DNA of 63,226 nt, counting the filler, from Octopus bimaculoides (Eukaryota), in the NCBI RefSeq assembly GCF_001194135.2. It is 6 parts of 5 records of this genome, joined end to end, with 100 filler letters (N's around TTAATTAATTAA, not from the genome) between each part and the next. Parts side by side here need not be neighbours in the genome. Positions count along the whole stretch, not along the records: positions 33,843 to 40,874 come from NC_068990.1; 5 more parts are not named here. One strand, given 5' to 3'. Numbering within the stretch: position 1 is the first letter of the stretch; each line of letters opens with the position of its first letter. Below the pieces are notes generated by a model. That model was not told the origin of the DNA and did not search any database. It saw nothing but the letters and a program-made list of their open reading frames with translations. A program made the translations under genes and the position numbers. Shown here piece by piece: positions 38,125-40,874 of this stretch.

Positions 38125-38373
38125 CTTTAATCTTCAAAGTAAATTCTGGAGAGCAATGATTTCTGTCTCAAAAAGTCCAAGATAAATCTTTTTCAGTGAT
38201 ATTTTGAATTGAAAGAGATGAAACGTTCTTAGTATGGCTAACTTCATGGCTGCCATTCCTATCACAAGTCCAGTCACATTCGAGATTATAATACTTGTTT
38301 CTCCAGACAATAATTCTTTCCATATTTGGCACTTCGATATGAAGGGTTGTGTTCCCTCCAAACACAGCTGGTC
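38125..38373 (-). CDS. Internal exon encoding an Ig-like ectodomain, with an in-frame TGA at 38170-38168
   Basis: Acceptor ctatttacttcag|GA and donor AAAG|gtaagg; 249 bp, phase 1-1. Peptide GPAVFGGNTTLHIEVPNMERIIVWRNKYYNLECDWTCDRNGSHEVSHTKNVSSLSIQNITEKDLSWTF*DRNHCSPEFTLKIK, with four N-glycosylation sequons. Confidence 0.65.
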
Positions 38374-39097
38374 CTGAAGTAAATAGATAAATCAATATCA
38401 TTGATTTCTTTCAGGGATTTTTTCATCATCATCACTACATATGGCTGTATTCATTTGGAAGCAAAATTACCACATATTACTCCTCACCATTTCCTTTCCA
38501 CTACTACTTACTCCCCCACCGCCACCCTCTGCCAGAACAACTTTTTCCCTTATTTCCATTATCCTTTCCCACACTATTTTCACTGATCACATCCTCTCTG
38601 TGCCTTCTCTCTCCTCAGCCATACTTCATCTTAACCCCTCAAGCGTTTGCTGTGATTCTCAACACCCTCTCATAGCCACCCTTATGTACCCTCCTCTACA
38701 TCTACCTCCCCACCACTCTTGCATCTACAACATCCCCCTGCCTTCTCTCTCTCACCTTTGCCCCCCCCCACTCATCAACTGCACCTCCATCCTTGTTCAT
38801 CACTCACTGTATTCACCTCTGCCTACATCTCTCTTATCACACTACCCCCTCCCTTTTCACTTCCCCTGATCTATTGTCTACCTGTCACTACCATTTTTAT
38901 CTTCTTCCTAGCCACTCCCATCTACCTTCACACCTGTGCTCTTGTCTCTGTCATATTTTAGCCTTTCAACACACCTGATATAAAGCCACCCACCTCTCTC
39001 CTACTCTCTTCCTTCAAGTGATATTTTTATTTTTCCTTTCGTCCTTCCAATTACTTGATAACTTCATCAGTGGTGATGCCATGAAAATATCATATGG

Positions 39098-39495
39098 CAC
39101 TCTCTCTCTAAATTGGTGTAAGGAAGGGCATTGAAATGTAGAAACCACGCCAAAGCAGACACTGAAGCCTGACATAGTCCTGGGACTTGTGGTATCCTGT
39201 CAAAACATCCAACTTATGCCAGCATGGAATGTGGATGCTAAATGACGTTGATGATGATGAATATCATAACCACAATCACAATTATTATGACTGTCATAGT
39301 CCTAGTTGCAGGAGCGATGAGAAAATGCATCCTGTACACTCTGTGAAATGGTTGGCATTATGGAAGATAATCAGCCATAGAAACCATGCCAAAGCAAATA
39401 TTGGCGTTTGACACAGTCCTGCAGCTTGTTGGATCCTTTATAATTGTCCAAGTCATGCCAGCATGGAAGGAGGTCATTAAATGGTGATGGTTGTG
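39098..39495 (+). mobile_element. Two SINE family E 3' fragments (39098-39265, 39322-39495)
   Basis: Both contain tagaaacca.gccaaagca and atgccagcatggaa followed by GAT/GGT tails. Confidence 0.7.
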
Positions 39496-40269
39496 GTTGG
39501 TGCTCCTTAAAAGGAAATCGAGCGGATTGGAAAAAGTTTAAAAAAAAACCGAGTGAGAAAAAACTTTGAGAGAAAGAAATAAATAGGAAACAGAACCGAA
39601 AAGACAGCGTTTAGTTTAAAAGGAGAAAAAGGTTTGTAAATCCATTTACCATTTTGGAAAATTTTGTAATTTTTTGCAATTGTTAAATCTGTAAAAGATG
39701 GAAACAAAACTTTTTGAGTTTTCAGATTTTACCTTTGATCAATAGGATTCATTACTGTTTAAATTACAATATTTAAATAAAAATAATAATTAACACATGT
39801 CAATATAATTACATATCATATAAAGTGGCAGTTTGAGTGAAGATGTTGAACATGTGGTTGAATGCCTTCACAGAATCCAAAGAAATTGGTAAGGGTCTGT
39901 GTTGGCAAGACTATATTGAATGGAAAGAGTACAGTGAAATTGTCATGGAGAGTAGAAAATCCAACTTTTCAGAGAGAGTCCTTCAACAGGAAGAAGTCGA
40001 CAGGAGTGAGATTAAAAACAACCAGTTTTTGTCTAGCTTAGAGATGTAAAACTCTGCTGTATTTCTTTTCATTTTAGTTTTGCCAACTTTTCCCCGAAGA
40101 CAGAATGTCTAAAACTTTGGATTTTCTGCTCACTATGGAAATGTCTGTAAAAACTCTACTCCCTCTCTGTTGATTTGCGTATGTGTGTGTGTGTGTGCAA
40201 TGTAAGTGTACATGTGCGCCAGATTAGACTGTTGGAAAAGAAAAATTCCTAACATTGGGCTACAACAAG

Positions 40270-40400
40270 TGAATGTAGATGCCAAGAACCCTCCTAAGTA
40301 TCCTAGCTGTCCCTAATAACACTGTTTTCTTAAGCTCTACTAAACTGGGTTTTATGCCTATTTTCTCTATCCATCTGTTCAAATCTTAAGGGAAAGTTCG
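40270..40400 (-). mobile_element. R4/Dong-type 3' end fragment
   Basis: DLNRWIEKIGIKPSLVELKKTVLLGTARILRRVLGI, the conserved C-terminal LLGTARILR motif. Confidence 0.7.
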
Positions 40401-40404
40401 TCAT

Positions 40405-40874
40405 GCACCTATAACTACTGGAATGTATTTATCGACCCAAACAAGGGGGTCATTATAAGGAGCTTTAGGCTCATCACACTGCTCAATGCAGAGTTGAAGA
40501 TTTTGGCCAAGGTGCTAGCCAAGAGATTGGCGCTTGTCATGGGCAAACTGATCAGCAAGGTGCAGACATGCGCCATGCCGACCAGGTCTATCCACGACAA
40601 TCTCCATCTCATGCGCTACATCATAGAGAGGGTGGGTAACGAAGCTGGCGCGGGTGGTGCTTTGATCAATTTAGATCAGTCTAAAGCCTTTGATAGGGTC
40701 GACCATCGATACCTGGCAGCTGGCTTCGGTCCGGTCTTCCATGGGTGGATAGCTGCTTTATACAGCGGCATCTGCTCGGTCATACGGGTGAACGGTCATC
40801 TATCGGAACCGTTCAACATCTCGCATTTGGTTCGCCAAGGATGTCCTCTCTCCTCCCTTCTGTATGTATTGACT
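40405..40874 (+). mobile_element. L1/Tx1-like reverse transcriptase fragment
   Basis: FRLITLLNAELKILAKVLAKRL...LINLDQSKAFDRVDH...VRQGCPLSSLLY; cut by a scaffold linker. Confidence 0.92.

What the first reader, a model, noticed from the sequence alone, without database searches (positions are those of the whole stretch)
38168..38170. In-frame TGA at the Ig F-strand cysteine position of an otherwise intact exon: selenocysteine, editing-rescued stop, or secreted/membrane switch
Seen: the exon reads ...SSLSIQNITEKDLSWTF-TGA-DRNHCSPEFTLKIK and stays open after the stop, through a canonical donor and in frame into the TM exon. The TGA is residue 7 counting from the Asp, as the Cys is in the Ig motif D-x-x-x-Y-x-C, and another Cys follows five residues later. 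Established: UGA encodes Sec when a SECIS is present; A-to-I editing turns UGA into UGI, read as Trp; coleoid cephalopods recode very heavily by ADAR. Inference, four options: (a) an Ig-like selenoprotein; (b) an editing or readthrough switch between a secreted ectodomain and a membrane receptor, noting that the stop lies only 43 nt upstream of the last junction, inside the distance that escapes EJC-type NMD in mammals; (c) a nonsense allele or pseudogene; (d) a base-call error. Against (a): I saw no SECIS by eye. Against (b): the 5' neighbour G is disfavoured by ADAR.
Basis: partly seen in the sequence, partly recalled or inferred. Interest (0 to 1): 0.8.

Follow-up and report, generated by a model that had tools for sequence, protein, structure and literature searches.

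The report
Premature stop in octopus Ig-like gene
One T-to-A change has turned a cysteine codon into a stop codon in the last Ig-like exon of an uncharacterised, octopus-only membrane-protein gene. It looks like an ordinary knocked-out copy or null allele, not selenocysteine or RNA-editing recoding.

Summary
On the minus strand, a 249-nt phase 1-1 exon (38373-38125) with good splice sites has an in-frame TGA at 38170-38168. The frame stays open into a transmembrane exon (36847-36666).

The syntenic Octopus bimaculoides gene LOC106871836 has TGT (Cys) at that codon, so the stop is a single derived T>A change.

The exon encodes one domain of a family found here only in octopods (O. bimaculoides, O. 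sinensis, O. vulgaris, Argonauta hians). Members are small type-I membrane proteins, all unnamed. An AlphaFold2 model (pLDDT 95) matches I-set and V-type Ig domains.

In sequence register the stop sits at the canonical F-strand Cys. However, the B-strand partner is never Cys in 36 domains. The column holds 12 different residues, and where it is Cys it co-occurs with a Cys five residues later.

No SECIS-like element was found. The TGA is not in a dominant RNA duplex and has the 5' G that ADAR disfavours. The truncated product would lack the G strand and the membrane anchor, so it is not a clean secreted form.

Most likely this is a recent nonsense substitution: a null allele or young pseudogene in a fast-evolving family. 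Reads and RNA-seq are needed to rule out a base-call error, exon skipping or rescue by editing or readthrough.

The parts
39650..39688 (-). 39-nt linker mini-exon (phase 1-1) encoding (D)LTIAKNYKIFQN-G, with AG acceptor at 39690-39689 and GT donor at 39649-39648
   Evidence: Sequence. tblastn of P0001 residues 65-80 hits 39695-39648. Orthologous mini-exon at L001 11282-11329.
38125..38373 (-). Ig-like domain exon (249 nt, phase 1-1), the membrane-proximal domain of the gene
   Evidence: 94% nt identity to the O. bimaculoides exon; family HMM E=1.4e-36; AF2 model of the orthologous domain with pLDDT 95 and Ig-fold matches at TMq 0.66-0.75.
38168..38170 (-). In-frame TGA. The orthologue has TGT (Cys, family position 67), so this is a T>A change at the third codon base (window position 38168 on the minus strand).
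   Evidence: Alignment A1; residue counts for the column.
38125..38167 (-). 14 codons plus 1 base after the stop (DRNHCSPEFTLKIK): the F-G loop and G strand, still open. They differ from O. bimaculoides by one synonymous and one non-synonymous change.
36666..36847 (-). Transmembrane plus short cytoplasmic-tail exon (last coding exon), in frame with the Ig exon, stop TAA at 36668-36666
   Evidence: Homologous to the TM exon of paralogues P0006, P0004 and P0016 and to the TM part of the older O. bimaculoides model P0030.
36463..36588 (-). Second, diverged tandem copy of the TM exon (SSIPIYAIVIPSIIVLVAFLSTAFFVNWIKTCIIHDPPDVV*). The nearest AG would put it out of frame with the Ig exon.
   Evidence: Direct repeat D3, spacing 245 nt, 86% identity; tblastn; sequence.

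Best explanation
The window carries the 3' part of a gene from an octopod-restricted family of small type-I membrane proteins. These are built from tandem, exon-sized Ig-like (I-set-like) domains, a TM exon and a short tail. In this copy a single germline substitution, TGT (Cys) to TGA, created a premature stop in the membrane-proximal Ig exon. Translation of the normally spliced mRNA would end after ...DLSWTF. The product would lack the F-G loop, the G strand, the TM helix and the tail, so it would have an incomplete last Ig domain and would probably not fold. The locus is therefore most likely a loss-of-function allele or a young pseudogene, as expected in a fast-evolving, tandemly duplicating receptor-like family. 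Shown here: the stop, the exon structure, the orthologous Cys codon, the family and its fold, and the absence of a SECIS-like element. Inferred: that the change is real in the germline, that it is recent, and that the truncated product is non-functional.
For: Synteny with O. bimaculoides LGKD02011600.1 holds across 10573-15400 of L001 at 83-92% nt identity. The codon there is TGT. Seven of the other 35 domains in the alignment (eight of 36 counting the window row entered with Cys), including the closest membrane-proximal ones, have Cys at this column together with Cys at +5. The other domains carry 11 other residues there, so Cys is ancestral for this subtype and TGA is derived. The exon is as diverged as its introns (6.4% vs 5.3% substitutions), and pN/pS is 0.37, so purifying selection is weak at best. 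There are no other lesions: splice sites are intact and the exon has 0 indels against about 3 expected from the intron rate, which fits a recent event. No SECIS was found. The TGA is not in a dominant duplex and its 5' neighbour is G. DSSP on the AF2 model puts position 67 at the end of the F strand, with the G strand after it, so truncation breaks the domain. The family is lineage-specific and has many partial or variable models, typical of birth-and-death evolution.
Against: Everything after the stop is still open and spliceable (14 codons plus a 60-codon TM exon). pN/pS below 1 and the lack of indels mean the exon was under some constraint until recently. A functional bypass or a sequencing error would leave the same picture. 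I could not inspect reads, RNA-seq or a second individual. The species of the window is unknown, and domain 1 and the 5' end lie outside the piece. The O. bimaculoides model itself starts at an internal Met, and I found no signal-peptide exon within 10 kb upstream, so the functional state of the locus is uncertain even in the species with Cys.
Confidence: 0.77

Rival explanations
1. Base-call or assembly error: the true codon is TGT/TGC and the gene is intact.
For: It is a single base. Nothing else in the three exons of the piece is broken. The orthologue has TGT.
Against: Inference only. Substitution errors in polished assemblies are far rarer than the real divergence seen here, 16 differences in 249 nt against O. 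bimaculoides. The site is not in a homopolymer longer than the TTTTT just before it, and the change is a substitution, not an indel.
Confidence: 0.08
2. The nonsense exon is skipped. Because the exon is symmetric (phase 1-1, 249 nt), joining the mini-exon (ends ...AAT G) to the TM exon (AT GAG...) keeps the frame. The locus could then still make a shorter receptor with one Ig domain fewer.
For: Exon phases were read directly from the sequence. The number of recognisable domains differs between the family models recovered (one to four), and O. sinensis LOC115225115 has at least twelve numbered isoforms (X8-X12 seen here, 442 and 455 aa).
Against: No transcript evidence. Both splice sites of the exon are strong. 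Nothing suggests that this exon is alternative in O. bimaculoides (P0001 and P0030 both include it).
Confidence: 0.08
3. Recoding at the RNA or translation level. Either ADAR edits UGA to UGI (read as Trp), or near-cognate readthrough occurs, restoring a full-length membrane protein. This would give a regulated switch between truncated and anchored forms.
For: Coleoids edit heavily, and stop-loss editing (UAG>UGG) is handled explicitly in coleoid editome pipelines (PMC8382921). The exon plus proximal intron folds better than shuffles (z=-2.4). The frame is open downstream. The stop is 43 nt from the last junction.
Against: The 5' neighbour is G. The only substantial duplex, 38299-38331 with 38079-38111, lies about 130 nt upstream of the TGA. 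The A at 38168 has no dominant partner (best-partner probability 0.24-0.68, changing with context). UGA-G is not a known leaky context (general knowledge). The truncated form ends inside the Ig domain, so it is not a sensible secreted isoform. The orthologue simply encodes Cys, not Trp.
Confidence: 0.05
4. The UGA encodes selenocysteine, making this an Ig-like selenoprotein.
For: UGA aligned with Cys in a homologue is the classical Sec/Cys signature. A second Cys lies five residues on.
Against: No SECIS family matched at E<=10 anywhere in the piece on either strand. A loose SECIS-core and helix scan of 3373 nt downstream found 0 candidates, against a random expectation of 0.67. The column is hypervariable in the family (12 residues) and is not a redox motif. 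A one-species Cys>Sec switch would need a pre-existing SECIS.
Confidence: 0.01

Closest known systems
Octopus bimaculoides LOC106871836 (XP_014774040.2 = P0001; older version XP_014774040.1 = P0030), 'uncharacterized protein'
   Same: Syntenic orthologue. It has the same mini-exon, the same Ig-like exon (94% nt, 88% aa identity) with the same splice sites, and TM-exon copies downstream.
   Different: It has TGT (Cys) where the window has TGA. It has four tandem TM-exon copies against two in the window, and the first copy abuts an assembly gap. The current RefSeq model therefore reads through the donor (…EIKGKEITSANNNNNNSF*), while the older model splices into TM copy 2. It lacks the LINE fragment that the window has upstream.
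Octopod-specific family of unnamed Ig-like type-I membrane proteins (e.g. O. vulgaris CAI9744053.1 = P0006; O. sinensis LOC115225115, LOC115229017, LOC115225463; O. bimaculoides LOC106867739; Argonauta hians GAB1602944.1)
   Same: Domain signature: W22, E30-C31, C35, W64, F66, D68. Exon-sized domains are separated by '..YKI.Q.G' linkers, followed by a TM exon beginning '..G(T)SIP..' and a short tail with 'PPY.W'. P0006 has the same domain-2 type (FCDxxxCS) spliced to the same kind of TM exon.
   Different: Other members are open at this column. Most domains use a C24-C61 pair instead of C67-C72.
I-set immunoglobulin domains (titin, obscurin, twitchin, IgLON/neurotrimin)
   Same: The predicted fold matches: Foldseek probability 1.00, TMq up to 0.75, rmsd 2.0-2.6 Å for obscurin and titin I-set domains. 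Weak sequence matches go to Pfam I-set and titin.
   Different: Below Pfam's gathering score (best 23.6 vs 23.7 bits in a relative; no hit for the window protein). There is no canonical B-F disulfide: B-strand position 11 is I/T/V/A in 36 of 36 domains. There is an extra invariant C31-x3-C35 pair.
Eukaryotic selenoprotein genes with Cys-containing homologues
   Same: In-frame UGA opposite Cys in an orthologue.
   Different: No SECIS detected. The residue is not conserved or catalytic, and the UGA is seen in one sequence only.
ADAR stop-loss recoding in coleoids (UAG>UGG, treated in PMC8382921)
   Same: It would turn a stop into Trp and extend the ORF, and the host lineage edits heavily.
   Different: Here the codon is UGA with a 5' G, with no supporting duplex at the site and no RNA data.

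Membership tests
Selenoprotein gene | In-frame UGA aligned with Cys (or Sec) in homologues | tested here: met
   TGA vs TGT in the O. bimaculoides orthologue.
Selenoprotein gene | SECIS element in the 3' UTR | tested here: not met
   No SECIS family in Rfam 15 at E<=10 across 33843-40874 on both strands. 0 candidates in a loose core and helix scan of 34795-38167 on the minus strand. Caveat: an N gap at about 34220-34780 and sequence beyond the piece were not searchable.
Selenoprotein gene | Sec/Cys site is a conserved functional (redox) residue | tested here: not met
   The column holds 12 different residues in 36 domains and is Cys in only 8.
ADAR recoding site | Edited A lies in a stable double-stranded RNA stretch | tested here: inconclusive
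   The A at 38168 is predicted paired, but the best partner has probability of only 0.24-0.68 and changes with context. The only long duplex is 38299-38331 with 38079-38111, away from the site.
ADAR recoding site | Favourable 5' neighbour (not G) | tested here: not met
   The codon is U-G-A, so the 5' neighbour is G.
ADAR recoding site | A in the genome, G in the cDNA | not testable with these tools
   No RNA-seq access. An exact look-up of the truncated ORF in public assemblies found nothing.
Immunoglobulin superfamily domain (I-set-like) | Greek-key beta-sandwich fold | tested here: met
   AF2 model of the orthologous domain with a 35-sequence family alignment: pLDDT 95.1, pTM 0.84. All 50 listed PDB hits except one unidentified entry (7wso_C, 'membrane protein G') are Ig domains, TMq 0.55-0.75.
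Immunoglobulin superfamily domain (I-set-like) | Reaches Pfam's gathering score for an Ig family | tested here: not met
   The window protein has no Ig hit at E<=10. Relatives reach I-set E=5e-5 to 0.05, at best 23.6 bits against a 23.7-bit cut-off.
Immunoglobulin superfamily domain (I-set-like) | Canonical B-strand/F-strand disulfide | tested here: not met
   B-strand position 11 is never Cys (I26/T6/V3/A1). The F-strand Cys occurs in only 8 of 36 domains and co-occurs with C72.
Octopod Ig-like type-I membrane protein family (unnamed) | Domain matches the family profile and carries W22, C31, C35, W64, D68 | tested here: met
   HMM E=1.4e-36; alignment A2.
Octopod Ig-like type-I membrane protein family (unnamed) | Family-type TM/tail exon downstream, in frame | tested here: met
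   36847-36666 is homologous to the TM exons of P0006, P0004, P0016 and P0030.
Pseudogene / null allele | Disabling change relative to an intact orthologue | tested here: met
   TGT>TGA.
Pseudogene / null allele | Relaxed constraint or further lesions | tested here: inconclusive
   pN/pS is 0.37 and exon divergence (6.4%) is at least that of the intron (5.3%). But there are 0 indels against about 3 expected, and no second lesion.
Pseudogene / null allele | Loss of expression or of full-length protein | not testable with these tools

The most novel reading that the evidence does not exclude
The UGA is bypassed on purpose, by ADAR editing to UGG or by programmed readthrough. One octopus gene would then produce either nothing or a truncated product, or a membrane-anchored Ig-like receptor, depending on editing activity. 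That would be a stop-codon editing switch in a lineage-specific receptor family.
Probability: 0.04. Interest if true: 0.7.

Novelty: new member of a known kind. Interest (0 to 1): 0.17.

Why it matters
As a nonsense codon it matters little: it is one more disabled or null copy in a fast-turnover gene family, and mainly useful to genome annotators. The context is more interesting. The exon belongs to an unnamed family found here only in octopods. Its members are small Ig-like membrane proteins with a non-canonical cysteine pattern, exon-sized shuffled domains and tandem arrays of alternative TM exons. That layout resembles rapidly evolving recognition or immune-type receptors. If the stop were shown to be edited or read through, it would be a rare example of a stop-codon recoding switch in cephalopods.

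Tried and rejected
- An exact look-up of the truncated ORF (MILIY…SWTF) in public assemblies, meant as an independent sighting of the TGA, found nothing on record.
- A literature search for six LOC identifiers of the family returned no paper.
- My first strict SECIS pattern scan gave 0 hits in both real and random sequence, so it was uninformative. I replaced it with a looser one.
I modelled the 90%-identical O. bimaculoides domain instead.
- A search for a signal-peptide exon within 10 kb upstream in the O. bimaculoides locus gave only low-complexity matches.
- I looked for an alternative in-frame donor upstream of the TGA. The only phase-1 candidates are AAT|GTGACT at 38278, which would delete most of the domain, and a weaker CTT|GTGATA at 38266. 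I rejected both.
- The word-indexed protein search found no annotated O. sinensis or O. vulgaris orthologue. Its recall is visibly incomplete, because searches did not return P0001 itself. I do not use this absence as evidence.
- The weak hits P0027 and P0029 are a JGI/IMG protein named 'gliding motility-associated-like' and unnamed ENA proteins. They appear non-octopod, and I treat them as unrelated Ig-like repeats.

Full report
**Observation.** Reading the minus strand, the exon runs from 38373, just after the AG at 38375-38374, to 38125, just before GTAAGG. It is 249 nt long with phase 1 at both ends. It translates as PAVFGGNTTLHIEVPNMERIIVWRNKYYNLECDWTCDRNGSHEVSHTKNVSSLSIQNITEKDLSWTF*DRNHCSPEFTLKIK. 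The TGA is at 38170-38168, 43 nt before the donor. The donor AAG|GTAAGG is the best in the exon, matching 8 of 9 consensus positions. With the carried-over G, the exon beginning at 36847 behind a pyrimidine-rich tract and CAG reads DEEAGTSIPIYAIVIPSILDLVAILFIIFSVIFKWPPYIWIRTRVIQCVCHGKYQNPPEA*.

**Is it a real gene?** A protein search with the spliced conceptual product returned Octopus bimaculoides 'uncharacterized protein LOC106871836' (P0001, 88% identity, E=4e-55). I fetched its genomic locus as L001 (LGKD02011600.1). It is collinear with the window piece over about 5 kb at 83-92% nucleotide identity, so the two loci are orthologous and come from different Octopus species. P0001 also identifies a 39-nt linker mini-exon in the window at 39688-39650. 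The first Ig-like exon of the gene lies outside the piece. In the window, a LINE reverse-transcriptase fragment at 40494-40874 on the plus strand occupies the place where collinearity ends.

**The codon.** In the exon alignment O. bimaculoides has TGT where the window has TGA. This is one of 16 substitutions in 249 nt, and the exon has no indels.

**The family.** An exhaustive HMMER search of 1.84 billion representative proteins found 29 proteins at E<=0.001, and 24 at E<=1e-10.
- Every named member I looked up comes from O. bimaculoides, O. sinensis, O. vulgaris or Argonauta hians, and all are 'uncharacterized' or 'hypothetical'. The two weakest hits are a JGI/IMG 'gliding motility-associated-like' protein and unnamed ENA proteins.
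- Members have a signal peptide and one to four domains of about 81 aa, separated by '..YKI.Q.G' linkers. A TM segment and a short tail follow.
- The O. vulgaris paralogue P0006 and the older O. bimaculoides model P0030 both splice a domain of the window's type directly to a TM exon homologous to 36847-36666.
- The current O. bimaculoides model instead reads through the donor (…EIKGKEITSANNNNNNSF*). In that assembly the first TM copy abuts a run of N, which probably explains the difference.

**Fold and the 'Ig cysteine'.**
- Pfam gives no Ig hit for the window protein. Seven of ten relatives give sub-threshold I-set matches, the best being 23.6 bits against a 23.7-bit cut-off.
- I built an AlphaFold2 model of the O. 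bimaculoides domain, which is 90% identical to the window's, using a 35-sequence family alignment. It is confident: pLDDT 95.1, pTM 0.84.
- All but one of its 50 listed PDB matches are Ig domains: titin and obscurin I-set, IgLON, twitchin and antibody V domains, at TMq 0.55-0.75. The domain is therefore Ig-like.
- In sequence register the stop falls on the canonical F-strand Cys. The Pfam I-set matches place family position 61 on the profile's Asp 67, and a weak titin alignment puts position 67 on the titin Cys.
- The canonical disulfide does not exist in this family. B-strand position 11 is I, T, V or A in 36 of 36 domains. Position 67 holds 12 different residues (C8, E8, D5, Y5 and others). 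Cys67 co-occurs with Cys72: 7 domains have both, 1 has C67 only and 3 have C72 only. Most other domains carry a C24/C61 pair, and C31 and C35 are (nearly) invariant.
- I therefore read the lost Cys as half of a subtype-specific F-G hairpin disulfide, not the Ig core disulfide.

**Selenocysteine.** A UGA opposite Cys in an orthologue is the classical Sec signature, so I tested for a SECIS.
- Rfam 15 at E<=10 over the whole piece on both strands returned no SECIS family.
- A loose scan of my own for RUGA…AA…GA with two helices found 0 candidates over the 3373 nt downstream of the stop. Markov-random sequence gives 0.67 on average.
- The column is also hypervariable, so Sec is very unlikely.
- One caveat remains: the N gap at about 34220-34780 and anything beyond the piece could not be searched.

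**Editing or readthrough.**
- The exon plus proximal intron folds somewhat better than shuffled sequence (z=-2.4). That signal comes from a 33-nt, 79% complementary pairing between exon 38299-38331 and intron 38079-38111, about 130 nt upstream of the TGA.
- The A at 38168 has no dominant partner. Its best-partner probability is 0.24-0.68 and changes with the context folded. Its 5' neighbour is G.
- Stop-loss editing is recognised in coleoid editomes as UAG>UGG (PMC8382921), so it cannot be dismissed in principle. Nothing here argues for it.
- The truncated protein would end at the last residue of the F strand and lack the G strand (DSSP). It would be a broken domain, not a tidy secreted ectodomain.

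**Selection.**
- Nei-Gojobori counts for the exon are pN=0.046 and pS=0.124, a ratio of 0.37.
- Substitution divergence is 6.4% in the exon and 5.3% in 1310 aligned intron positions of the same BLAST segment.
- The introns carry 16 indel events, about 12 per kb, and the exon carries none where about 3 would be expected.
- So the exon evolves fast and shows only weak signs of constraint. It carries no second lesion. That fits a recent nonsense substitution, whether fixed or still segregating.

**Alternatives that keep the gene alive.** The exon is symmetric, so skipping it would join the mini-exon to the TM exon in frame. The family models recovered differ in how many domains they contain. I found no acceptable in-frame cryptic donor upstream of the stop.

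**Verdict.** The in-frame TGA is real in this sequence. It is best explained as a derived TGT>TGA nonsense substitution in the membrane-proximal Ig-like exon of an octopod-specific receptor-like gene, giving a null allele or young pseudogene (confidence about 0.77). The remaining probability is divided as follows:

| Alternative | Confidence |
|---|---|
| Base-call error | about 0.08 |
| Exon skipping | about 0.08 |
| Rescue by editing or readthrough | about 0.05 |
| Selenocysteine | about 0.01 |

Reads, population data and RNA-seq would settle it.

Noticed in passing
window 36463-36588 (-) and L001 14556-15319: The TM/tail exon is tandemly repeated: two copies in the window (245-nt spacing, 86% identity) and four in O. 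bimaculoides. Three of the four O. bimaculoides copies and both window copies still end in a stop in the TM-like frame. They could be alternative 3' exons or a minisatellite-like exon array.
   Followed up: partly
window 37562-37676 (intron between the Ig and TM exons): A near-perfect 53-bp hairpin (-77 kcal/mol, z=-15.6) made of two inverted copies of what looks to me like a tRNA/SINE-derived sequence (ARAGORN called no tRNA in the piece). It is present at the syntenic site in O. bimaculoides (about 95% identical, no compensatory changes). It gives sub-threshold Rfam hits to plant miRNA precursors, which are probably chance. It could be an ADAR substrate or a hairpin-RNA source.
   Followed up: partly
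window 38299-38331 and 38079-38111: A 33-nt exon-intron complementarity (79%) pairs the B-C part of the Ig exon with the start of the downstream intron. It resembles an editing-site complementary sequence, but it does not cover the TGA.
   Followed up: partly
window 40494-40874 (+): A reverse-transcriptase (RVT_1, E=2.7e-12) fragment of a LINE-like element, antisense to the gene and cut by the piece edge. It is absent from the orthologous O. bimaculoides intron, where collinearity stops at window 40432.
   Followed up: partly
window 35483-35522 and 37867-37906: A 40-nt inverted repeat, 98% complementary and 2.3 kb apart, brackets both TM-exon copies. Each arm adjoins repeat-like sequence: the 37867-37906 arm borders the element at 37922-38026, which recurs elsewhere in L001.
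   Followed up: partly
window 36789-36791 (-): The predicted TM helix contains an Asp (…SILDLVAIL…). Paralogues have Glu or Gly at or near this place (P0016 SILEFVAIL, P0004 LCLENII). A charged TM residue is typical of receptors that pair with signalling adaptors. This is speculative.
   Followed up: no
L001 9938-10210 and 14300-14555: The O. bimaculoides RefSeq model of the orthologue starts at a Met inside Ig domain 1, although the exon continues upstream as …VVFGGSATLSISIPNM. Its 3' end is affected by an assembly gap. No signal-peptide exon was found within 10 kb upstream.
   Followed up: partly
window 38440-38960: A roughly 500-nt purine-rich (minus strand) low-complexity tract lies in the intron just upstream of the Ig exon, with GC skew down to -0.67 on the plus strand. 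It produces long spurious plus-strand ORFs.
   Followed up: no
window about 34220-34780: A run of N (assembly gap) inside the piece, in the region that could still belong to the 3' UTR. It limits the SECIS search.
   Followed up: no
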